Virus record (IMG/VR): IMGVR_UViG_3300044712_002668
Span: 186,001-250,000 of that record
Direction: 5' to 3' (one strand)
Length of the DNA stretch: 64,000 nucleotides
Each line of letters opens with the position of its first letter. Within the stretch, counting starts at the first letter, position 1. Below the pieces are notes generated by a model. It saw nothing but the letters and a program-made list of their open reading frames with translations, ran no database searches and was not told where the DNA came from. This document shows, one piece after another, positions 935 to 37,782 of the stretch. Position numbers and translations under genes: made by a program.

Positions 935-968
935 TAATTTGATATATAAGCGGAACGCGAGTTTAGAA

Positions 969-1037
969 TCACCATTAGTATAATGGCAGTACGGTACTCA
1001 TATGAGTACCAGTGCAGGTTCGAATCCTGTAGGTGAT
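969..1037 (+). pseudogene. degenerate tRNA-like gene (Met-CAT-like relic)
   Basis: D arm GTAT-AATGGCA-GTAC and T arm GCAGG-TTCGAAT-CCTGT are present; acceptor is one base short; anticodon arm is the palindrome GGTACTCATATGAGTACC with no 7-nt loop. Confidence 0.6.
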
Positions 1038-1076
1038 TTATACAAATTTCGTTCCGCTTATTTATTTAAGGGTTAA

Positions 1077-2384: not shown

Positions 2385-2615
2385 GTGGCATCAGATGATA
2401 AACCAAGAGTAGAAGGCTCGATAGAGGCAGCTAGAGGAAACGGATTTTTTGTAGTTGGAGTATTAACTGAAGTTGGTACTGTGACACAAGTTCTGTGTCA
2501 GTTGTCTGGTAAAATGAGGACTCATAATATAAAAATAGTGGAAGGGGATAAGGTTGAAATAGAACTTGATCCTTACAACATGTCAAAAGGTAGAATAATA
2601 TATAGGAAAAAGTGA
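2385..2615 (+). CDS. infA: translation initiation factor IF-1
   Basis: [38 protein letters not shown] matches the IF-1 signature. Confidence 0.93.
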
Positions 2616-3124
2616 TGAAGAAGCCAAGTAATTTTATCCAAAAGGGATTGTTGAGATTTATAGAAGGTGATGCTACAAACCCTACTGGTAGTAGTATGCA
2701 ATATATTTTGCAGGTTTGTAATGATGATGGTTTATATGGGGCAGGATTTTCAGGGGCGCTATCTAAGAGATACCCTCAAGTTGAATCTGAATACAGAAAG
2801 TTTTGGAGAAACAAGTTTGGTAAACTAAAGCTTGGAGAGATTCAGGTTATACAAGTAAAGAGCGATGTTGCTGTTATCAATATGATCGCTCAAAAGGGTG
2901 TTGTTTCCAAAACAAATCCAATACCTTTAGATTTGAAAGCTCTCAAAGAATGTTTATCAAAGGCTGGTACAGAAATCAGCGATAACTCTGCGTCAGCTCA
3001 TATGCCAAGAATTGGCTGTGGTTTGGCTGGAGGTAAATGGGAAGATGTTCAACCGTTAATAGAAGAAGAGTTATTGAAACGCGGGGTAAATGTTACAGTA
3101 TATGATTTACCAGAGGAAAAATGA
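2612..3124 (+). CDS. macro domain protein (ADP-ribose / Appr-1''-p processing; Poa1p/DarG-like)
   Basis: [23 protein letters not shown] and [13 protein letters not shown] motifs. Confidence 0.88.
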
Positions 3125-6988: not shown

Positions 6989-7873
6989 TTATATCACAGT
7001 ATTCATATTTTGTTGAAGGTAACCTATATAATATTCAAATGATTCATTAGGTTTCAATTCTCCATCTTCAATTTTCTTTTGAAGAACGTTTCTCAACTCA
7101 CCGATTTTTGGTCCTAATGGAATATTCAGGCTATCTGAAATAGCATTTCCCAATCCCTTTGGGAGATAGGTTGTTTTTTCATCCTCTTGTCTTATTTTTA
7201 TAATTCTCTTTTTAAGATTATCAATACCTCTTAAAATTTTATTTCTTTTACTATCATTACCTGTAGTAATATCAGCTTTAGATAGCTCAAGGATATCATC
7301 CAGGTAAGGACCCATTTCCTTGTCAAATCTTCTTACAGCATTATCTGACCATGAGTCATCATACCCCTCAGTGTACCCAAGATTGTTTATCAAAAACTTG
7401 ATGTGTTCTTTTGTTCCGGGTGAGAAGATATTGTATTTTTTCGCAAACTTCTCAAAGATTTTGGAGCTGTGGTGTTCGTGGTGATGAAACGTTACTTTAC
7501 CATTTTTCCATTCAAAAGTATACGCTTTTCCAAGATCATGAAAAAGCGCAGCCCACCTTAAAGGTACTACTGGTAATGTTTGGTTTACTACCCTTATGGT
7601 ATGCGGCCAAATATCTTTAAATACATTCTTTTCTGTACTGATTTTTTTAGTCTTCTTTAAATTATCAGCATCTTCTATTTCTGGAATAGTGATTGCAAAA
7701 AATCCACATTCCTTTAAAAGATGAAGGGCGATACCTACGTGTGTACCAAGTAATATTTTGTGAAGAAGTGATAAATCTGTGTCTGGTGATAATTCCTTTA
7801 TGTTTGGAATTATACTATTTACAGTTCCATGATTGGCAACTTCTAAAATTTGTATCAATATGTTACTAGACAT
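6989..7873 (-). CDS. HD-domain protein related to the body/tail of CCA-adding enzyme, lacking the nucleotidyltransferase head
   Basis: DIWPHTIRVV, AALFHDLGK, HHHEHHS, LSKADIT; no GG..RD.LL/DxD head motif at the N-terminus. Confidence 0.8.
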   Translation of the reverse strand: MSSNILIQILEVANHGTVNSIIPNIKELSPDTDLSLLHKILLGTHVGIALHLLKECGFFAITIPEIEDADNLKKTKKISTEKNVFKDIWPHTIRVVNQTLPVVPLRWAALFHDLGKAYTFEWKNGKVTFHHHEHHSSKIFEKFAKKYNIFSPGTKEHIKFLINNLGYTEGYDDSWSDNAVRRFDKEMGPYLDDILELSKADITTGNDSKRNKILRGIDNLKKRIIKIRQEDEKTTYLPKGLGNAISDSLNIPLGPKIGELRNVLQKKIEDGELKPNESFEYYIGYLQQNMNTVI

Positions 7874-8152: not shown

Positions 8153-8865
8153 TAACTCACCTTATTTGGAATATATGATATTTTATCTTTACCACAGGTT
8201 GTTTCAAACAAAGCTTGAATCCATCTCTCTGCGGTAACATAATCTTCAATTATATCCAAACAACTCTCGACTTTTTCTAAATCGAATGTGATTTCATTTG
8301 AGTCCCTGAAGTTATCCAAACTCAACCAAACTTTATCATGTTCTTTATATTCTATAGCTTTAAGAAAATCATACACATCATTGCTATCAACTATGTAACC
8401 ATAATTATTATTGATTGTGCTATACTCTTTAGATAAAGGAAATAATGGTAATTTCTTTTTCTCTGCTAGAACCATGTAATCATTCTTGTCATCTGAATCT
8501 ACTATTATTTTTTTTCTAGTCAGGTTTAGTATATCCAGTATTTTTGGGGATGGTGGGGTATCTAATTGGATACGATGTAGGACGGCCCAGAGGGCAGGGT
8601 GTTCCAGTCGTAACGAAAGGTCTCCACGCTCTATGATATCTCGTCTCCACCTGCCGTGCAAGTGCCCGCAAACACGTAGCTTATCGCTATTGTTGATCAG
8701 GGTGTCAAGCCAGTCACTTGATGGATATGCCGTTTCGCGTTGCGTCAAGGATTTTAGATTTATGTTCCATTCTATAAAAGGATATTTTACAGATAGGTCA
8801 ACTATATCCTCTATATTAACGCTATCATCGATTCCATTAATGGATACTGTACAAACCATAAACAT
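8152..8865 (-). CDS. phage TIM-barrel-like hypothetical protein
   Basis: TVSINGIDD, YPFIEW, YPS..W and HLHG motifs recall a common phage family; function unknown. Confidence 0.45.
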   Translation of the reverse strand: MFMVCTVSINGIDDSVNIEDIVDLSVKYPFIEWNINLKSLTQRETAYPSSDWLDTLINNSDKLRVCGHLHGRWRRDIIERGDLSLRLEHPALWAVLHRIQLDTPPSPKILDILNLTRKKIIVDSDDKNDYMVLAEKKKLPLFPLSKEYSTINNNYGYIVDSNDVYDFLKAIEYKEHDKVWLSLDNFRDSNEITFDLEKVESCLDIIEDYVTAERWIQALFETTCGKDKISYIPNKVS

Positions 8866-12431: not shown

Positions 12432-12941
12432 TTATATTTGATCTAGTTTTATTAAACCATGATCTAATTCCCAATGACAGTTTCTACAAAGCGGAATTTG
12501 ATTTGATGGATCATTTACCGTTTCCAATAATGTGTTGTCAGGATATTCGTGTAATGGTATTTTATGTGCTAATTCAACATGAATAGAATATCCGCATTTT
12601 TTACATGGCATCTTTGTCATGTTTTTATTCCAGTAACGGTTCAAAGACCTGATCTCGTGATGTAACCAAGATGTATGCCTTCCTTTCTTTTTCTCTTTTT
12701 CTCTAAGTTCTCCGATTGTTTTTTGTTTTGTTGAATATTTTTCACGGCACGTTGCACATGTTTTTGCCCTAACAAAAAGTTCTTTACCACAATGTGTACA
12801 AAAACCTCTTGACTTTTTTAATCTTTTCGGAAACAGTTTGTTATTGTATCGTGCTGCGCAAGATTTTGAACAAAAAACAGGGTTATTTGTTGTTGTATCG
12901 CACTGTTTACACTTTATCAATATCTCATCTGATAATGCCAT
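12432..12941 (-). CDS. HNH homing endonuclease
   Basis: FCSKSCAA zinc repeat; CKKC...ELAHKIP...NQIPLCRNCHWELD. Confidence 0.88.
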   Translation of the reverse strand: MALSDEILIKCKQCDTTTNNPVFCSKSCAARYNNKLFPKRLKKSRGFCTHCGKELFVRAKTCATCREKYSTKQKTIGELREKEKKKGRHTSWLHHEIRSLNRYWNKNMTKMPCKKCGYSIHVELAHKIPLHEYPDNTLLETVNDPSNQIPLCRNCHWELDHGLIKLDQI

Positions 12942-16219: not shown

Positions 16220-16369
16220 AAGCAACGAAAATGGTGAGACCCTACATGCCTTTCGGCTCCGTCGTGTCTGCCAATTTCACCATACCTCTCTTGCGAGAGA
16301 TAGCGGGACTCGAACCCGCACATCTTTTGGATAACAGTTTTGCAGATGAAAGATCTCAGTCGCGTTGTT
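16220..16369 (-). ncRNA. scaffold RNA copy 1 carrying a circularly permuted class-II tRNA(GCA)
   Basis: P1-GCG-P2-UUUCA|UC scaffold; cargo 16259-16346 is 3' half, GCAA loop, then 5' half. Confidence 0.8.
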
Positions 16370-18055: not shown

Positions 18056-18058
18056 TAG

Positions 18059-18130
18059 AGACTCAGGTAGGGATTGAACCTACGACCAGCGACTTAACAG
18101 GCCACCGCTCTACCACTGAGCTACTGAGTC
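18059..18130 (-). tRNA. tRNA-Asn(GTT)
   Basis: GACTCAG/CTGAGTC, GTGGC-CTGTTAA-GTCGC. Confidence 0.9.
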
Positions 18131-26124: not shown

Positions 26125-26130
26125 AAAAAC

Positions 26131-26308
26131 GGGGCTGCTCTACCGTTGAGCTACTCAACCTGTATTCAAACATTTCTTCGAACGGCACCTTCGCAAAGTG
26201 ATATCCCTTTGCACTCCAGGCTTTAGCTTACGCTTAACGTTGAGAGGAAATTGCCTTCCCAGGACTGTCATACATGTTGATACTGGATTCGAACCAGTGA
26301 CCAACCCC
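26131..26308 (-). ncRNA. circularly permuted tRNA-like gene without scaffold
   Basis: 3' half 26275-26308 precedes 5' half 26131-26160; GTTGA/TCAAC and GCCCC/GGGGT pair across the halves. Confidence 0.65.
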
Positions 26309-26312
26309 TCAG

Positions 26313-26386: not shown

Positions 26387-26391
26387 ATATA

Positions 26392-26496
26392 ATAGCGAAA
26401 ATGGTGTGACAAATGGGAACCGTCCCGTATTTAGGCCCGGAGTCGAACCGATGCCCTCCAATTTTGGCGGAGATGAAATGTCACGAACGCGCTACT
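26392..26496 (-). ncRNA. scaffold RNA copy 2 (degenerate T-arm cargo)
   Basis: UAGC-GCG...GACA-UUUCAUC...UGUC...UUUC-GCUA. Confidence 0.75.
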
Positions 26497-26498
26497 AG

Positions 26499-26581
26499 TG
26501 CCATTGACAGGATTCGAACCTGCATGAGAAAACTCGTCACGTTCTTAGCGTGATATGTATACCAAATTCCATCACAATGGC
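26499..26581 (-). tRNA. tRNA-Leu(AAG)
   Basis: TCACG-CTAAGAA-CGTGA, Leu-type D arm and variable arm. Confidence 0.85.
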
Positions 26582-26586
26582 ATGAA

Positions 26587-26760
26587 GATAACGAAAAGAT
26601 TGTCAGACGGGGTTTTTGCACTAGCCTCCCCGATGATTGTAAATTGAGACTTATTTACTACTAGCAAAACTAGCATCTCAATTTTGGTCGGGGCCGGGAA
26701 TCGCACCACGGTTTCTGTATTTTTCTGATATAGATGAACCATCCAACTATGCGCGTTATC
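26587..26760 (-). ncRNA. scaffold RNA copy 3 carrying a permuted tRNA-Pro-like cargo
   Basis: GAUAAC-GCG...GAUGG-UUCAUC; T arm + CCCCGACCA, hairpin linker, then UCGGGG. Confidence 0.75.
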
Positions 26761-26762
26761 TG

Positions 26763-26845
26763 TGCCGTCAACAGGACTCGAACCTGCATGAGAAATCTCG
26801 ATAGTTTTTAAAACTATTGTGTATACCAAATTCCACCATAACGGC
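26763..26845 (-). tRNA. tRNA-Leu(TAA)
   Basis: ATAGT-TTTAAAA-ACTAT. Confidence 0.9.
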
Positions 26846-26852
26846 TAAAATT

Positions 26853-27060
26853 AAAACAACGAAAAGGGCTCAGACGAAGTTTTTCCAGCATCCGGCCACC
26901 GCAAAAAGCATATTTTAGTTTCGGTTATGTTTCCGAACTCATCTCATCTCTGTCATTCCTGAATAGAAATCGGGGATGAGTACCGCGCGGCGTAAGGGAG
27001 TCGAACCCTCATCGTTTGATTCGTAGTTCAAGATGAATCGTCCAAAAATCGCGTTGTTTT
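26853..27060 (-). ncRNA. scaffold RNA copy 4 carrying a permuted tRNA-Arg(ACG)-like cargo
   Basis: AACAAC-GCG...GACGA-UUCAUC; CU-ACG-AA loop, T arm, ACGCCGC, linker, GCGGUG. Confidence 0.75.
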
Positions 27061-27063
27061 TAG

Positions 27064-27139
27064 ATGCGGGTCTTGGATTTGAACCAAGGGAACTAGGCTT
27101 ATGAGACCCAGGAGTTAGGCCGGACTACTCTAACCCGCA
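27064..27139 (-). tRNA. tRNA-Met(CAT), initiator-like
   Basis: TGCGGGT/ACCCGCA, TGGGT-CTCATAA-GCCTA, fMet-like D arm GAGT/ACTC. Confidence 0.82.
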
Positions 27140-27146
27140 ATAATGT

Positions 27147-27268
27147 AAGTAACGTAAAGATCGAGACCCTACATGCCCACATGGGCGATTCCCCAGGTAA
27201 AGAACCTCGAAAGGTTCGGCGGGGAATTAAGTTTCGAGCTTAGATGAAAGATCCCTAACGCGTTACTT
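27147..27268 (-). ncRNA. scaffold RNA copy 5 (structured non-tRNA cargo)
   Basis: AAGUAAC-GCG...GAUC-UUUCAUC...GGUC...UUAC-GUUACUU. Confidence 0.75.
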
Positions 27269-27305
27269 GGTATAACATATAACATTATATTATATGTTAT
27301 TTAGA

Positions 27306-27427
27306 AACAACGAAATTATATTGACAATGGGCCGGTATTTTTAGCACCGTTCTCCTTTGACCCAGACCGGAATTGAACCGGTTCTCGCCCTAATTTTTGA
27401 TGGATGTAATGTCAATAGCGCGTTGTT
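27306..27427 (-). ncRNA. scaffold RNA copy 6 (T arm plus acceptor-strand cargo)
   Basis: AACAAC-GCG...GACA-UUACAUC...ACCGG-UUCAAUU-CCGGU...UGUC...UUUC-GUUGUU. Confidence 0.75.
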
Positions 27428-27867: not shown

Positions 27868-27900
27868 ATTGTAAAGTTACAAAAATATGCATATAACAGG

Positions 27901-27983
27901 CTCCTGAGGAAAGACTCGAACTTCCATAATCCTTACGGATGACACGTTAACAGCGTGCTGCATTACCATTATGCTACCCAGGA
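27901..27983 (-). tRNA. tRNA-Asn(GTT) with long variable arm
   Basis: TCCTGGG/CTCAGGA-G73, GCACG-CTGTTAA-CGTGT, extra arm ATCC-GTAA-GGAT. Confidence 0.8.
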
Positions 27984-27988
27984 ATAAA

Positions 27989-28130
27989 CTTGACGAAAAG
28001 CTTGAAGACCATTTTTTTTCGCGCTTTACTATTAAGCTATATGAGCAAGAGTTTGATTTGCGCTCATATCGGGACTTGCACCCGAAACTTCGTCATTAAC
28101 AGTGATGAACGATCTTCTAATCGCGTCAAG
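27989..28130 (-). ncRNA. scaffold RNA copy 7 carrying a circularly permuted tRNA-Asn(GUU)
   Basis: cargo 28020-28105; joining CG|UCA gives an unbroken cloverleaf. Confidence 0.85.
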
Positions 28131-28132
28131 AG

Positions 28133-28205
28133 CGATCTGGACGGGAGTTGAACCCGCACAATACACTTCGACAGAGTGTTGCACTACCAATTGTGCTACC
28201 AGACC
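28133..28205 (-). tRNA. tRNA-Asp(GTC)
   Basis: ACACT-CTGTCGA-AGTGT, G73. Confidence 0.9.
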
Positions 28206-28210
28206 AAACG

Positions 28211-28285
28211 TGGGTTATCCCGGTAACGATCCGGGGAATTCTTCTACTTAAGAGGTAGTTGCTGTTCCATTCTAGCTTATAACCC
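28211..28285 (-). tRNA. tRNA-Lys(CTT)
   Basis: GGGTTAT/ATAACCC, CTAC-CTCTTAA-GTAG; T loop ATCGTTA. Confidence 0.8.
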
Positions 28286-28289
28286 ATAA

Positions 28290-28369
28290 CTTAACGAAAA
28301 TGTAAAAGACCTTTTTGTTTTTTAATTTTTCATATTAATTTTAGATGAAAGATCCTTCAGCGCGTTAAG
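28290..28369 (-). ncRNA. scaffold RNA copy 8 (minimal AU-rich cargo)
   Basis: CUUAAC-GCG...GAUC-UUUCAUC-(about 30 nt AU-rich)-GGUC...UUUC-GUUAAG. Confidence 0.75.
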
Positions 28370-28371
28370 AG

Positions 28372-28446
28372 TGGGCCCAGCCGGTAACGATCCGGCGAAT
28401 TCTTCTGCTTAAAAGGCAGCTGCTGTTCCATTCTAGCTTTAGGCCC
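28372..28446 (-). tRNA. tRNA-Lys(TTT)
   Basis: GGGCCTA/TGGGCCC, CTGC-CTTTTAA-GCAG; T loop ATCGTTA. Confidence 0.8.
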
Positions 28447-28452
28447 AATATG

Positions 28453-28568
28453 ATATGACGAAAAATTAATGACCTGTTTTTTCAGCGGGACTTGAACCCA
28501 CAAATGTTTCCGTATAGGGGAAATGCTTTAACCAATTTAGCGATGAAAGGTCATTCAGCGCGTCATAT
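28453..28568 (-). ncRNA. scaffold RNA copy 9 carrying an acceptor-less tRNA body (UAU)
   Basis: D arm, UUUCC-CCUAUAC-GGAAA and T arm lie directly between UUUCAUC and GGUC. Confidence 0.75.
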
Positions 28569-28652: not shown

Positions 28653-28808
28653 AGATAACGAAAAATTGAAAAACCCTTTTTTACGCGCTCTGACCAACTG
28701 AGCTATCTGCCTATTTTGGGTTCAATTAAGAACCTTGTAGGCAGAATTGGATTCGAACCAATGACATCGTCCTTATAATGGATGAAAGATTTTTCTACCG
28801 CGTTATCT
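28653..28808 (-). ncRNA. scaffold RNA copy 10 carrying a circularly permuted tRNA-Ile(UAU)
   Basis: cargo 28684-28782; joining CG|UCC restores CGUCC/GGACG. Confidence 0.82.
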
Positions 28809-32432: not shown

Positions 32433-33791
32433 TTATAGTTTTGCAGCAGCCAATTCGGCCAACGGGGAACGTTCGCATTTTGATAAAGTAATATGTCCAA
32501 CCATTTCTTCATCTTTCATCTTCTCTATAGCTAAAGAAAAACCGTTTGTTTTCTTATCAAGATAGTGAGCATCGATTTGTTCTGGGTCACCGGTCAATAC
32601 TATTTTTGTTTTCTCACCACATCTTGTAATCAAAGTTTTAATCTCATGTAATGTAGTATTCTGCATTTCATCGGCTATGATGAATTGACATGGTAAGCTT
32701 CTTCCACGAATGTATGTCAATGGTTCAACTTTGATTTTCTCTTGTTCGAATAGTTGTCCATAATCCATTCCTGTTTTTTTCTTTCCACCCAACATCATAA
32801 TCAATTCAAGGTTGTCATAGATGGGCTGCATCCAGGGATCCATCTTCTCTCCCATATCTCCAGGTAGGAATCCTAAATCCTTTCCCATTGGCATAACCGG
32901 ACGGCTTACAATCATCTTCGTATAACCACCCTCTATAAATGTTTTATAGAACCCAGCACAAATGGCAAGTAAACTTTTACCACCACCAGCCGATCCAGAT
33001 AGGGTTACCATTTTAACATCGTCATCCAATAATAAATCCAATGCAAATTGTTGTTCCCTGTTCTTTGGTTTGATTCCCATCACCCCCTCTTTAGGAACTT
33101 TCAATGGACATATCTTTTTATATTTTCCAATGTACCTTCCTAAAGCTGTCCTTCCCATATCACTTCTCATCGCAATACAGGCATTAGGATATAAATCAAT
33201 ACCAGCAGGAGGAAGGATAGCTCCAGCTTTAAACATCTCATTTATATAAGAATCTTCAACCTCTAAATCTATAATGCCAGATATAAGCTGATCAGGGTCT
33301 ATTGATTGATTTTCATATGAAGCCGATTGTATTCCTAGACTGTCAGCACGAATGCGTAAGTTTACATCCATGGTGACTAGAATAGCTCTCAACTCTTGGC
33401 TCTCCTTTATATCAAGAGCTGATTGTAGGATGGCGTTGTCCATGCTGTTGTTCTCCATGCCAACACCAAGAAAACGTCTCTCACGGGGCACGTAGACCTT
33501 TAAAATACCATCCCCTACCGGTACTCCGTCTGATAAACTTCCTTCGCAACGCAACTCGTCAATCAAACGGCAGGCTTCCCGCGCTCCTCTCCCACGTATG
33601 CTCTGCTCTGATTTCAATTTATCAAGCTCTTCAAGCACATATATGGGGACATATAAATTGTTATCCTCAAATTTAAAAATAGATCTTGGATCGTGAATTA
33701 AAACATTCGTATCAAGAATATAACTTTTTTTTGTCAAAAGGACCTCTTTAGGGAGAATTTTATCTCCCTTCTTAATACCAGTATATGCCAA
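32433..33791 (-). CDS. phoH: PIN-PhoH (PhoH2/YlaK-like) protein
   Basis: PIN ILDTNVLIHD...VLEELD; PhoH GSAGGGKS, PLTYIRGRSL, DEMQN, LTGDPEQID. Confidence 0.9.
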   Translation of the reverse strand: MAYTGIKKGDKILPKEVLLTKKSYILDTNVLIHDPRSIFKFEDNNLYVPIYVLEELDKLKSEQSIRGRGAREACRLIDELRCEGSLSDGVPVGDGILKVYVPRERRFLGVGMENNSMDNAILQSALDIKESQELRAILVTMDVNLRIRADSLGIQSASYENQSIDPDQLISGIIDLEVEDSYINEMFKAGAILPPAGIDLYPNACIAMRSDMGRTALGRYIGKYKKICPLKVPKEGVMGIKPKNREQQFALDLLLDDDVKMVTLSGSAGGGKSLLAICAGFYKTFIEGGYTKMIVSRPVMPMGKDLGFLPGDMGEKMDPWMQPIYDNLELIMMLGGKKKTGMDYGQLFEQEKIKVEPLTYIRGRSLPCQFIIADEMQNTTLHEIKTLITRCGEKTKIVLTGDPEQIDAHYLDKKTNGFSLAIEKMKDEEMVGHITLSKCERSPLAELAAAKL

Positions 33792-36931: not shown

Positions 36932-37477
36932 TCATTCTTCCACGTATGGGATCAAGGCTATGTACTTTGGCTCAACCTCTTCTACCAACCATACACCATT
37001 GTCACTACAATAAAACTTCTTCCCAGCCTTATACATCTTCCCGGCATCTACAGATAATAACATCGGCTTCCCATGTCTTTTTCCAACCTCCCAGGCTACA
37101 CTCTTGTCCTTACTCAAATGTACATGATGCCTGTCCCCCTTGATTATACCCTTCTCAAATATGGATTTTACATTCCTTGTAGCCGTTCCATGATACAATT
37201 CCTCCGGCGGCTCTGTCTCCTTATACCCCAAATCTACATCTATACTATGCCCCTGTACCGCCCTTATCTTCTTTCCATCTTCACTGAAACTAAATCTCTT
37301 TTTGTTGTTGTTCTCTACTATTTCTTTCAATTCATCCAAACTAATACTTTTCCCTACACTCTTCAAACCTTTCAATAAATCAGATACACTTACCCACCCA
37401 CCAGCATCCAATACTATCCCGGCTTTTGATGGTTCATGCCTCAATACCAAACTTAAAAAACGGCTCAAATTTTTCAT
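36932..37477 (-). CDS. kptA: RNA 2'-phosphotransferase (Tpt1/KptA)
   Basis: SRFLSLVLRH, KKRF, IRAVQGHS, LYHGT, RHHVHLS and NGVWL motifs. Confidence 0.95.
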   Translation of the reverse strand: MKNLSRFLSLVLRHEPSKAGIVLDAGGWVSVSDLLKGLKSVGKSISLDELKEIVENNNKKRFSFSEDGKKIRAVQGHSIDVDLGYKETEPPEELYHGTATRNVKSIFEKGIIKGDRHHVHLSKDKSVAWEVGKRHGKPMLLSVDAGKMYKAGKKFYCSDNGVWLVEEVEPKYIALIPYVEE

Positions 37478-37782
37478 CCAAAAATCATCCTGTATATAAT
37501 GTAAAGGATTCCAACTTGCAAAAACCATTGCATTCTTAAAAAAATCCCCCTAATCCATAACCTCCTATAACATCGTAATAATAAATTAATTCTCAATCCC
37601 TCAAGCTCATCCAATGTCAATTCTTGATTGAGCTGTTTATAGTTTATCATTACCGCAAAGATAAATTTATCTATCTTGCCCTTCATCTCTATCCAGGCAA
37701 AATATGGAGAAAATATCACTATCGGATGTGCCCCCAAAACCAATTCTATCTTCTCCTCTAAATACTTCTCTACATCATCCAT
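37474..37782 (-). CDS. hypothetical protein
   Basis: ORF coupled to its neighbours. Confidence 0.45.
   Translation of the reverse strand: MDDVEKYLEEKIELVLGAHPIVIFSPYFAWIEMKGKIDKFIFAVMINYKQLNQELTLDELEGLRINLLLRCYRRLWIRGIFLRMQWFLQVGILYIIYRMIFG

What the first reader, a model, noticed from the sequence alone, without database searches (positions are those of the whole stretch)
28020..28105. Cleanest case: intact circularly permuted tRNA-Asn(GUU)
Seen: the joined sequence is GCUCAUA-UA-GCUU-AAUAGUA-AAGC-G-CG|UCA-CU-GUU-AA-UGACG-AAGUU-UCGGG-UGCAAGU-CCCGA-UAUGAGC-G. All four stems pair without mismatch and G73 fits Asn. The junction is unique: it cannot slide in either direction. A 14-nt linker (28047-28060) joins the 3' end to the 5' end. 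Inference: intact pairing argues for current function.
Basis: partly seen in the sequence, partly recalled or inferred. Interest (0 to 1): 0.86.

Follow-up and report, generated by a model that had tools for sequence, protein, structure and literature searches.

The report
Phage Y RNA mimicking permuted tRNA-Asn
The "scrambled" asparagine tRNA gene is real and conserved, but it is most likely one of at least 14 tRNA-mimicking Y RNAs that partner with a Ro60 protein encoded by this giant phage, not a gene for a working tRNA.

Summary
On the minus strand, 28105-28061 (positions 29-73), a 14-nt linker and 28046-28020 (positions 1-28) join into a tRNA-Asn(GUU) cloverleaf with 21 Watson-Crick pairs, G73 and one possible junction.

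The locus is not a stand-alone gene. It is the cargo of a 142-nt element (27989-28130) clamped by two covarying helices with conserved motifs (RACGCG, UUCAUC, UUUUCG). The window holds 11 such elements, and four or five related jumbo-phage lineages carry more. Cargo ranges from complete permuted tRNAs, through acceptors closed by a tetraloop and T-arm-only forms, to bare hairpins.

The same genome encodes a full-length Ro60/Rsr orthologue about 2.7 kb before the window start. In four phages this gene is followed within 0.75-1.6 kb, on the same strand, by sibling elements. The closest Rfam family is YrlA (Y RNA-like), with significant but sub-threshold hits.

All three phages that carry the Asn-type element also carry ordinary tRNA-Asn genes. 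No bulge-helix-bulge motif, splicing endonuclease or RNA ligase was found.

Best reading: a YrlA-like Y RNA with a tRNA-Asn-derived module. It is a new variant of a known kind. Maturation by cutting and ligation remains a low-probability but exciting alternative.

The parts
27989..28130 (-). Whole element E3 (142 nt): scaffold plus a tRNA-Asn-like module. It starts 2 nt after the 3' end of tRNA-Asp (28132-28205) and ends 5 nt before the next tRNA (27899-27983).
   Evidence: Model R1, built from hairpin-only siblings without this copy, hits 27987-28132 at 41 bits, E 1.1e-9.
28124..28130 (-). P1 5' strand, CUUGACG. With the next two bases it forms the conserved 5' motif GACGCG (28122-28127).
   Evidence: Pairs with 27989-27995. 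P1 covaries over 38 elements and in alignment A4 (98.8% of cells paired, 5 of 7 pairs changed on both sides).
27989..27995 (-). P1 3' strand, CGUCAAG, preceded by the conserved UUUU (27996-27999).
28108..28117 (-). P2 5' strand, GAAGAUCGUU. It contains the conserved GAUC whose U pairs with G, a wobble that exists only on this RNA strand.
   Evidence: Duplex with 28004-28013 at -12.0 kcal/mol. The MFE fold contains it. P2 covaries.
28004..28013 (-). P2 3' strand, AAUGGUCUUC (conserved GGUC).
28104..28110 (-). Conserved junction motif GUUCAUC (family consensus UUUCAUC). Its last two bases are positions 29-30 of the tRNA-like module.
   Evidence: Columns TTCATC are invariant in alignment A4. The motif is present in 10 of the 11 window elements; the 949-1058 element lacks it.
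28061..28105 (-). tRNA 3' part, positions 29-73. Anticodon hairpin UCA-CUGUUAA-UGA (loop 28096-28102, GUU 28098-28100); C42 G43; variable loop AAGUU; T arm UCGGG-UGCAAGU-CCCGA; acceptor 3' strand UAUGAGC; G73 (28061).
28047..28060 (-). Linker CAAAUCAAACUCUU that closes the acceptor stem. It starts with C (position 74) and ends with U at -1, like the trailers and leaders of the ordinary tRNA genes here.
28020..28046 (-). tRNA 5' part, positions 1-28. Acceptor GCUCAUA; U8 A9; D arm GCUU-AAUAGUA-AAGC; G26; C27 G28.
28014..28019 (-). A6 joiner between G28 and P2. It lies opposite the 2-nt joiner CA (28106-28107). Together with the split anticodon stem they form a three-way junction.
28654..28807 (-). 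Sibling element E1. Its cargo is a permuted tRNA-Ile(UAU)-like module with canonical D and T loops and A73.
   Evidence: R1 43 bits. Rfam YrlA 33.1 bits.
28454..28567 (-). Sibling element E9. Its cargo is a normal-order tRNA-like module, called tRNA-Ile(tat) by ARAGORN and Rfam. Its 'acceptor' is built from the scaffold motif UUUCA/UGAAA, and position 33 is C.
28290..28369 (-). Sibling element E2: scaffold hairpin with no tRNA-like cargo (YrlB-like).
26391..27427 (-). Five further sibling elements: 27306-27427, 27148-27267, 26855-27058, 26587-26760 and 26391-26496. Cargo is a T arm plus hairpins, or is not tRNA-like at all.
16221..16369 (-). Sibling element E10: class-II tRNA-like cargo whose acceptor helix is capped by a GCAA tetraloop, with no linker, so no free ends are possible.
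949..1058 (+). Eleventh element, on the same strand as the Ro60 gene and about 3.6 kb downstream of it. It holds a normal-order tRNA-like cargo (ARAGORN 'tRNA-???').

Best explanation
The locus is a gene for a roughly 142-nt non-coding RNA of the Y RNA kind (YrlA-like), the RNA partner of the phage's own Ro60/Rsr protein. It is not a gene for a decoding tRNA.

Shown:
- The RNA is set between two ordinary tRNA genes on the tRNA strand.
- Its ends pair into two covarying helices, P1 and P2, which carry conserved motifs.
- These helices clamp a tRNA-Asn-derived module at its anticodon stem. The module runs T arm, acceptor stem closed by a 14-nt linker, D arm, which is the 'circularly permuted tRNA' topology already described for YrlA.
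- The same scaffold occurs 11 times in the window and again next to the Ro60 gene in four related phages.

Inferred:
- Processing of the flanking tRNAs by RNase P and 3' trimming releases the element as a discrete RNA closed by P1.
- Ro60 binds the scaffold. RACGCG sits where YrlA has GNCGAAN0-1G.
- The tRNA-like module recruits or occupies a tRNA-binding factor. It may tether Ro60, and the RNase T-like exonuclease encoded beside it, to that factor.
- This copy has a 7-bp acceptor stem, U at -1 and C at 74. Its linker may therefore be opened by RNase P and completed to CCA, as shown for Mycobacterium smegmatis YrlA. That would give a two-piece RNA held together by the scaffold.
- GUUAA and G73 are conserved in three diverged orthologues. 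This suggests that something reading tRNA-Asn identity is the partner: AsnRS, a queuosine enzyme, or an anticodon nuclease acting on G34-U35 tRNAs. This last point is speculation.
For: 1. Scaffold membership. Model R1, built from 12 hairpin-only elements without this copy, hits 27987-28132 over its full length at 41 bits, E 1.1e-9. It recovers 11 elements in the window. A motif-based finder gives 10 on the minus strand, against 0.23 per shuffled window.

2. RNA structure. On alignment A4, 89% of cells pair, 10 of 16 pairs change on both sides, 0 of 500 shuffles reach this, and slid controls fall to 33-52%. P1 shows up to four pair types per position over 38 elements. The G.U pairs exist only on the tRNA strand.

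3. Ro60 identity. L024:680-2272 (the same gene as L231:6001-7593) is 531 aa and lies on the same contig, 2.7 kb before window position 1. It matches Pfam vWA_Ro60 at E 7e-8. By phmmer it matches D. radiodurans Rsr (2nvo) at E 1.6e-8 over residues 33-494. A profile of five orthologues gives 2nvo at 3e-15 and human Ro60 at 4.5e-12.

4. Association with Ro60. The Ro60 clade was found in 5 of 2.9 million IMG/VR contigs. Four of these are the contigs that hold the elements, and the fifth comes from the same sample as the remaining element-bearing contig. In four phages, one to three elements lie 0.75-1.6 kb downstream of Ro60 on the same strand.

5. Closest Rfam family is YrlA. Hits: L011 45.2 bits (E 5e-7, whole architecture aligned, with P1 on the YrlA terminal stem); L044, an orthologue of this locus, 42.3 bits; L070 37.8; window E1 33.1; L009, the other orthologue, 31.3.

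6. Cargo heterogeneity. Some acceptors are capped by a tetraloop (window 16221-16369; L233 8618). In L011 11027, P2 replaces the anticodon stem outright. Other elements carry only a T arm or are bare hairpins.

7. Redundancy. Ordinary tRNA-Asn(GUU) genes coexist with the Asn-type element in all three phages.

8. Published descriptions. YrlA is described as a circularly permuted tRNA with a closed acceptor. M. smegmatis YrlA is cut by RNase P and receives CA (PMC4201824; 10.1101/312249).
Against: - Unlike described YrlA RNAs, which 'lack the anticodon loop', this copy keeps a complete 7-nt anticodon loop with U33 and A37.
- The orthologues keep GUUAA and G73, as if decoding or charging identity mattered.
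- The literal Ro-binding motif GNCGAAN0-1G is absent; RACGCG stands in its place.
- The Rfam YrlA model does not hit this copy at all, and no family member reaches the 69-bit gathering score.
- This copy lies 31 kb from the Ro60 gene on the opposite strand, whereas published Y RNAs lie within about 4 kb on the same strand.
- Ro60 binding has not been shown for any member.
- The scaffold could instead be a processing or stability hairpin of the tRNA operon.
Confidence: 0.68

Rival explanations
1. It is a genuine circularly permuted tRNA-Asn gene. The scaffold is cut away on both strands at the three-way junction (after CA at 28106 and after G28 at 28020). The ends are ligated into a circle. RNase P and 3' trimming open the linker, CCA is added, and a working tRNA-Asn results, perhaps as a back-up that host anticodon nucleases cannot touch until it is ligated.
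For: - The joined cloverleaf is perfect and has a unique junction.
- Anticodon GUU, A37 and G73 (the Asn discriminator) are conserved in three orthologues at 62-66% identity, with compensatory changes in every stem.
- The linker has leader- and trailer-like ends: C74 and U at -1.
- The phage encodes Tpt1/KptA, a Macro-domain protein and part of a CCA-adding enzyme.
- Authors of the YrlA structure paper raised this possibility themselves (10.1101/312249).
Against: - There is no BHB motif. The flanks form a 10-bp helix with 2-nt and 6-nt joiners.
- Pfam found no splicing endonuclease, RtcB or Rnl-type ligase in the window or in the 10 kb upstream.
- Rfam found no known self-cleaving ribozyme.
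- The break point is not fixed relative to the conserved motif. It is 28|29 here and in L009, 27|28 in L009 1044, and 31|32 with four extra bases in the L044 orthologue.
- One orthologue has A33.
- The same scaffold carries cargo that can never become a tRNA.
- The element is redundant with ordinary tRNA-Asn genes in all three phages.
- This copy has G55 and no G18G19.
- Tpt1/KptA is already known in jumbo phages as an RNA-repair gene (PMC7824862).
Confidence: 0.08
2. The scaffold is a processing or stability hairpin of the polycistronic tRNA transcript, for example an RNase III-type site or an end-protecting stem. The tRNA pieces inside it are passengers with no function of their own, and the link to Ro60 is coincidental synteny.
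For: - Elements sit exactly between tRNA genes, 1-3 nt after one and 5-8 nt before the next.
- Several elements have no cargo at all.
- P1 plus P2, with an internal loop, gives 15-20 bp of helix.
Against: - The Asn-type cargo is kept intact in three phages, with 14 of 21 pairs changed on both sides.
- Co-occurrence with one Ro60 clade covers 4 of 5 contigs out of 2.9 million, plus same-strand adjacency in four phages.
- The YrlA-like architecture scores at E down to 5e-7.
- Many tRNA-tRNA spacers in the same array have no such hairpin.
Confidence: 0.12
3. It is a decaying relic of a tandem tRNA-Asn duplication that lost the outer halves, and it has no present function.
For: - A 3' half, an inter-tRNA-like spacer and a 5' half are what such a deletion would leave.
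- The T and D loops of this copy are degenerate.
- Stems-only permuted cloverleaves arise at 0.35 per shuffled window.
Against: - All 21 pairs are Watson-Crick.
- There are orthologues in two other phages, with compensatory changes and the same scaffold.
- The junction falls exactly at the conserved scaffold motif.
Confidence: 0.05

Closest known systems
YrlA (Y RNA-like A; Rfam RF02553), the Ro60/Rsr-bound tRNA-mimicking Y RNA of bacteria and mycobacteriophages (Chen et al. 2014, PMC4201824; Wang et al. 2018, 10.1101/312249)
   Same: - The 5' and 3' ends pair into a two-helix stem with an asymmetric internal loop.
- The stem continues into an anticodon-stem equivalent, a T arm, an acceptor-like helix closed by a loop, and a D arm, which is a permuted-tRNA topology.
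- The genome encodes Ro60, and sibling copies lie within 0.75-1.6 kb of it on the same strand.
- Hairpin-only companions exist (YrlB-like).
- The Rfam model aligns the whole architecture.
   Different: - All scores are below the gathering threshold (at most 45 bits against 69), and this copy is not hit.
- RACGCG replaces GNCGAAN0-1G.
- There are at least 14 copies per genome rather than 1-4, and most are dispersed inside tRNA arrays.
- Several copies, including this one, keep a full anticodon loop and a discriminator matching the anticodon.
- An extra conserved junction motif, UUUCAUC, is present.
Mycobacterium smegmatis YrlA
   Same: It has a 7-bp acceptor stem. In vivo it is cut by RNase P, and the 3' end receives CA to complete CCA, leaving two halves bound to Rsr (PMC4201824). 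This locus also has a 7-bp stem, one encoded C after the discriminator, and U at -1.
   Different: Cleavage is not shown here. M. smegmatis YrlA has no anticodon loop.
Circularly permuted tRNA genes of Cyanidioschyzon merolae, some green algae and Thermofilum pendens (Soma 2007; Maruyama 2010; Chan 2011, as cited in 10.1101/312249)
   Same: The 3' half lies upstream of the 5' half, with a short linker between acceptor strands. The leader and trailer pair with each other. The joined product is a canonical cloverleaf.
   Different: - Those use a BHB motif cut by the archaeal or eukaryal splicing endonuclease, followed by ligation. There is no BHB here.
- Bacteria and their phages are not known to have that endonuclease.
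- Those genes are the source of the isoacceptor, whereas this one is redundant.

Membership tests
Scaffolded element family of this phage clade (model R1, defined here) | Full-length match to a covariance model of P1, P2 and the conserved motifs, built without this copy. | tested here: met
   27987-28132 (-), 41 bits, E 1.1e-9, model positions 1-74 of 74.
YrlA-type Y RNA | The genome encodes a Ro60/Rsr orthologue. | tested here: met
   A 531-aa protein 2.7 kb before the window start. Pfam vWA_Ro60 E 7e-8; 2nvo Rsr E 1.6e-8 (single sequence) and 3e-15 (profile); human Ro60 4.5e-12.
YrlA-type Y RNA | Encoded within about 4 kb of Ro60 on the same strand. | tested here: not met
   This copy is about 31 kb away on the opposite strand. 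Sibling copies with the same scaffold meet the criterion in four phages, and the 949-1058 (+) element lies about 3.6 kb away.
YrlA-type Y RNA | tRNA-like domain in permuted order: T arm, acceptor-like helix closed by a loop, D arm, with an anticodon-stem equivalent formed by distant segments. | tested here: met
YrlA-type Y RNA | GNCGAAN0-1G motif near the 5' end. | tested here: not met
   GACGCG (family consensus RACGCG) occupies the equivalent place, at the end of the terminal helix. Four of six positions agree.
YrlA-type Y RNA | Rfam RF02553 gathering score of 69 bits. | tested here: not met
   No hit for this copy at E<10. Orthologues score 42.3 and 31.3 bits, and the best sibling 45.2 bits.
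YrlA-type Y RNA | Bound by Ro60 in vivo. | not testable with these tools
   Needs RNA immunoprecipitation or a gel-shift assay.
Circularly permuted tRNA gene | The 3' half lies upstream of the 5' half on one strand, and the joined halves give a cloverleaf accepted by a tRNA finder. | tested here: met
   ARAGORN calls tRNA-Asn(GUU). The strict finder gives a unique junction at 28|29.
Circularly permuted tRNA gene | Bulge-helix-bulge motif formed by leader and trailer at the junction. | tested here: not met
   The flanks form a 10-bp helix joined by CA and A6. There is no 3-nt/4-bp/3-nt arrangement.
Circularly permuted tRNA gene | Splicing endonuclease and RNA ligase available. | tested here: inconclusive
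   None was found in 58 ORFs of the window and the 10 kb upstream. Only about 74 kb of a 336-455 kb genome was seen. Tpt1 is present.
Circularly permuted tRNA gene | A circular intermediate or a mature joined tRNA is detected. | not testable with these tools
   Needs RNA sequencing.

The most novel reading that the evidence does not exclude
This copy and its sibling at 28654-28807 are Y-RNA-scaffolded permuted pre-tRNAs that are really matured. The Ro60-binding stem is excised, the anticodon stem is ligated, and RNase P plus CCA addition open the acceptor end. That would be the first permuted-tRNA maturation pathway in a bacterial virus. It would also be a direct evolutionary and functional bridge between Y RNAs and tRNAs, as speculated for YrlA in 10.1101/312249. 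A weaker version needs no ligation: the two-piece, CCA-ended RNA would be charged by AsnRS while still bound to Ro60.
Probability: 0.09. Interest if true: 0.92.

Novelty: new variant of a known kind. Interest (0 to 1): 0.63.

Why it matters
Bacterial Y RNAs are known as one to four genes beside rsr, and the job of their tRNA-like domain is still unknown. Here a clade of uncultured jumbo phages (169-459 kb contigs) carries a Ro60 gene plus a much larger repertoire: at least 14 scaffolded RNAs in this genome. Most of them are interleaved with the phage's tRNA genes.

Their modules span every step from a complete permuted tRNA, with anticodon and matching discriminator, to a bare hairpin. This has three consequences:

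1. It gives natural intermediates for the proposed origin of YrlA from dimeric tRNA precursors.
2. It suggests that Ro60 can be equipped with modules of different tRNA identity (Asn-, Ile-, Tyr- and Met-like). That points to specific tRNA-binding partners that can be tested.
3. It warns that tRNA finders mis-annotate such elements. One is called tRNA-Ile(tat) and another 'tRNA-???'.

If the minority reading were true, it would be the first permuted tRNA processing seen outside archaea and eukaryotes.

Tried and rejected
- Bulge-helix-bulge reading of the junction: the flanks do not form it.
- Known self-cleaving ribozymes or introns in the flanks: Rfam at E<10 gives only weak noise, RAGATH-21 at 17.5 bits and a group II fragment at 15-22 bits.
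- Megablast of 4 kb against GenBank phages: no match. By PhoH2 protein the nearest cultured relatives are only 32-36% identical, so host and taxonomy stay unknown.
- Synteny through the neighbouring PhoH2 gene: relatives exist (55-64% identity) but have no tRNA array beside it.
- ARAGORN on all rotations of each element: too permissive to be useful. It was replaced by a strict finder.
- Metagenome scan for the Asn-type junction (TTCATCANNGTTAATGACG): 115 stretches, of which only this phage and the L009 phage are real.
- IMG/VR scan for the 3' junction (AGCGCGAAAAAANNTGGTC): no new members.
No host or prophage link was found.
- The 858-aa and 430-aa ORFs flanking Tpt1, as candidate ligases: no Pfam, PHROG, NCBIfam or PDB signal, and no homologues beyond the protein itself.
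- Single-sequence AlphaFold model of the Ro60 orthologue: pLDDT 40, unusable, so no fold search was run. Sequence and profile matches to solved Ro60 structures were used instead.
- MITE or terminal-inverted-repeat reading of P1 and P2: rejected. The arms differ between copies with compensatory changes, and they use G.U pairs that would be A.C on the other strand.

Full report
**1. The observation**

The window is part of a 336-kb IMG/VR contig of an uncultured jumbo phage, IMGVR_UViG_3300044712_002668. Window position equals contig position minus 186000. One of its proteins is also recorded on a 455-kb contig. More than 34 tRNA genes lie on the minus strand between 6.6 and 29 kb.

Read on that strand, 28105->28061 gives tRNA positions 29-73, 28060->28047 is a 14-nt linker, and 28046->28020 gives positions 1-28. 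ARAGORN calls the joined 72-mer tRNA-Asn(GUU). All 21 stem pairs are Watson-Crick and the discriminator is G.

A strict search for permuted cloverleaves finds only junction 28|29 for this locus. It finds two loci on the tRNA strand (this one and 28654-28807), against 0.35 per window in 20 dinucleotide shuffles. Both are less canonical than in the sibling or the orthologues.

**2. The locus is the cargo of a larger, repeated element**

The sequence between tRNA-Asp (28132-28205) and the next tRNA (27899-27983) reads as follows:

- P1 CUUGACG, then CG
- 4 nt, then P2 GAAGAUCGUU, then CA
- the permuted tRNA
- A6, then P2' AAUGGUCUUC
- AAGCUUUU, then P1' CGUCAAG

The minimum-energy fold of the 142-mer contains P1, P2, the T arm, the closed acceptor helix and the D arm (-35.3 kcal/mol, z -2.0).

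The same frame recurs ten times on the minus strand of the window: RACGCG, a helix with GAUC/GGUC, (U)UUCAUC, cargo, an A-rich or AUGUA segment, and UUUUCG. Shuffled windows give 0.23.

Over 38 copies from five phage lineages, P1 shows up to four pair types per position and P2 always forms. On an alignment of 12 hairpin-only copies, 89% of cells pair, 10 of 16 pairs change on both sides, none of 500 shuffles reaches this, and slid controls drop to 33-52%. The conserved U.G and other G.U pairs exist only on the tRNA strand, so this is an RNA structure and not a DNA inverted repeat.

A covariance model built from those 12 copies, without this locus, hits 27987-28132 over its full length at 41 bits, E 1.1e-9. 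It also finds an eleventh copy at 949-1058 on the plus strand.

**3. The cargo is heterogeneous**

- Complete permuted tRNA-like modules: this one (Asn); 28654-28807 (Ile-UAU, canonical loops, A73); in other phages, Met-CAU and Tyr-GUA types.
- Normal-order tRNA-like modules whose 'acceptor' is made of the scaffold: 28454-28567, called tRNA-Ile(tat) by ARAGORN and Rfam although position 33 is C; and 949-1058.
- A class-II-like module whose acceptor is capped by a GCAA tetraloop, so it has no ends to free: 16221-16369.
- A copy in which P2 replaces the anticodon stem outright: L011 11027.
- T-arm-only forms.
- Bare hairpins: 28290-28369.

A frame that serves all of these cannot exist solely to mature tRNAs.

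**4. Relatives**

An IMG/VR scan for the 5' motif returned 106 stretches. True elements occur only in this contig and in four others of 169-459 kb.

Two hold orthologues of this locus:

- L009 3494-3351: break 28|29, loop UAGUUAA, G73, canonical D and T loops.
- L044 2466-2337: break 31|32 with four extra bases after the conserved motif, loop UUGUUAA, G73.

The three are 62-66% identical. All 21 tRNA pairs and all 7 P1 pairs are kept in all three, and 14 of the 21 are changed on both sides. The fold is therefore under selection, which disposes of the relic reading. GUUAA and G73 are invariant, which is notable.

Against a decoding role:

- One orthologue has A33.
- The break point moves relative to the conserved motif.
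- All three phages also have ordinary tRNA-Asn(GUU) genes: window 27899-27983 and 18058-18130, L009 6972-7046, L100 546-619.
- The Ile-UAU sibling is likewise redundant with L024 3592-3673.
- The Ile-UAU sibling's orthologue in L070 has a degenerate 5-nt loop.

**5. What the frame is**

Rfam's nearest family is YrlA (Y RNA-like, RF02553). All hits are below the 69-bit gathering score but significant:

| Element | Bits | Note |
|---|---|---|
| L011 10921-11033 | 45.2 | E 5e-7 |
| L044 orthologue | 42.3 | |
| L070 | 37.8 | |
| Window 28657-28795 | 33.1 | |
| L009 orthologue | 31.3 | |

In the best alignment, P1 falls on the YrlA terminal stem, P2 on the second helix, and the T, acceptor and D elements on their counterparts.

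YrlA RNAs are the partners of bacterial Ro60 (Rsr). [quoted passage not shown] They are encoded within about 4 kb of rsr on the same strand, in 254 bacteria and 22 phages (PMC4201824; 10.1101/312249).

I therefore looked for Ro60. No ORF of the window is one. However, a locus of the same contig just upstream of the window (L024, also held as L231) has a 531-aa ORF that is one:

- It matches Pfam vWA_Ro60 at E 7e-8.
- It matches D. radiodurans Rsr (2nvo) over nearly its whole length at E 1.6e-8.
- A profile of five orthologues hits Rsr at 3e-15 and human Ro60 at 4.5e-12.

Searching IMG/VR for this Ro60 clade returned five contigs. Four are exactly the element-bearing contigs. The fifth is from the same sample as the remaining one.

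In four of them, one to three scaffold elements follow the Ro60 gene within 0.75-1.6 kb on the same strand. An RNase T-like exonuclease gene sits immediately upstream of Ro60.

**6. Mechanism**

Shown: the anatomy, the covariation, the family, and the Ro60 association.

Inferred:

- The element abuts a tRNA on each side. RNase P and 3' trimming of the neighbours should therefore release it as a discrete RNA closed by P1.
- Ro60 binds the scaffold. RACGCG stands where YrlA has GNCGAAN0-1G.
- The tRNA-like module engages a tRNA-binding partner.
- This copy has a 7-bp acceptor stem, one encoded C after G73 and U at -1, the same features as real tRNA genes here. It may be opened by RNase P and completed to CCA, as shown for M. 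smegmatis YrlA. The phage encodes at least part of a CCA-adding enzyme.
- What reads the conserved GUU and G73 is unknown. AsnRS, queuosine insertion, or a host nuclease aimed at G34-U35 anticodons are guesses.

**7. The cut-and-ligate reading**

In its favour:

- The perfect junction.
- The conserved identity nucleotides.
- The Tpt1/KptA and Macro genes.
- The fact that the YrlA structure paper itself raised the possibility.

Against it:

- There is no BHB.
- No endonuclease, ligase or ribozyme was found.
- The break position is variable.
- Some cargo cannot be matured.
- The element is redundant with ordinary genes.
- KptA is already known as a jumbo-phage RNA-repair gene (PMC7824862).

I give this reading about 0.08. 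A plain processing-hairpin reading gets about 0.12, and a relic about 0.05.

**8. Novelty and verdict**

No paper in the held library describes permuted tRNAs or Y RNAs in phage tRNA arrays. The kind (YrlA-like Y RNA with Ro60) is known, including in phages. The following are new:

- The scaffold, which has a different 5' motif and an extra UUUCAUC motif and is not captured by Rfam.
- The copy number: at least 14 in about 74 kb.
- The dispersal among tRNA genes.
- Modules that keep a full anticodon arm and a matching discriminator.

Verdict: new variant of a known kind, of real interest to Y RNA, tRNA-mimicry and phage biologists. It is not the intact permuted tRNA gene that was proposed.

Noticed in passing
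L231:6001-7593 (+), which is contig 181732-183324, about 2.7 kb before window position 1; also L231:4924-5613 and L231:38-1348: A full-length Ro60/Rsr orthologue. An RNase T-like DEDD exonuclease gene lies directly upstream, and a PARP-like protein (WGR, PARP_reg and PARP domains) lies further upstream. A WGR/PARP_reg protein also follows the elements in the 459-kb phage (L033:5066-5743).
   Followed up: partly
window 27899-27983 (-): tRNA-Asn(GUU), G73, with a long class-II-like variable arm (85 nt; Rfam 55 bits). It lies directly downstream of the element. Its orthologues in the other phages (L009 6972-7046, L100 546-619) have short variable loops.
   Followed up: partly
window 26125-26311 (-): Spacer between tRNA-Met and tRNA-Leu that holds a permuted tRNA-like RNA without the scaffold. 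A GGGGU/GCCCC closing stem (no anticodon loop), a T arm and a D arm are present, and the acceptor-like helix is interrupted by an insertion of about 105 nt.
   Followed up: partly
window 28211-28285 (-) and 28372-28446 (-): Two paralogous tRNA-Lys-like genes (anticodon loops CUCUUAA and CUUUUAA) with an unusual T loop, AUCGUUA. ARAGORN misses both, and Rfam scores one at 38.7 bits. They may be nuclease-evading tRNA-Lys variants.
   Followed up: no
window 28476-28550 (-) and 967-1039 (+): ARAGORN and Rfam 'tRNA' calls (Ile-tat and '???') that lie inside scaffold elements. Their acceptor stems are the scaffold helix, so they are probably Y-like RNAs that have been mis-annotated as tRNAs.
   Followed up: yes
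window 36935-37528 (-), 2612-3121 (+), 32436-33791 (-): Tpt1/KptA RNA 2'-phosphotransferase (E 1e-50), a Macro-domain protein, and a PIN-PhoH2 RNase/helicase. This is an RNA-repair or RNA-processing gene set. Tpt1 is flanked by orphan ORFs of 858 aa and 430 aa with no detectable homologues.
   Followed up: partly
window 6992-7873 (-): A 294-aa ORF that matches only the C-terminal HD half (profile positions 198-458) of a CCA-adding enzyme. The catalytic head may be in the neighbouring 237-aa ORF (8155-8865), which has no hit. This may be a split enzyme.
   Followed up: no
window 12435-12941 (-): An HNH endonuclease ORF embedded in the tRNA array.
   Followed up: no
linkers of L009 3494, 1365, 8539 and 1044, window 28654-28807 and L070 826: The linkers that close the acceptor stems of several permuted modules themselves form a small hairpin, with compensatory changes between orthologues (for example GGUUC…GAACC against GGCU…AGCC). 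The 14-nt linker of this locus does not.
   Followed up: no
window 16221-16369, 27148-27267; L009 1365; L070 7721 and 8199: A sub-family of elements shares an extra hairpin GCCGAAAGGC (or GCCCAUGUGGGC) followed by AUGUA. The AUGUA pairs with the UUUCAU motif and so extends P2.
   Followed up: partly
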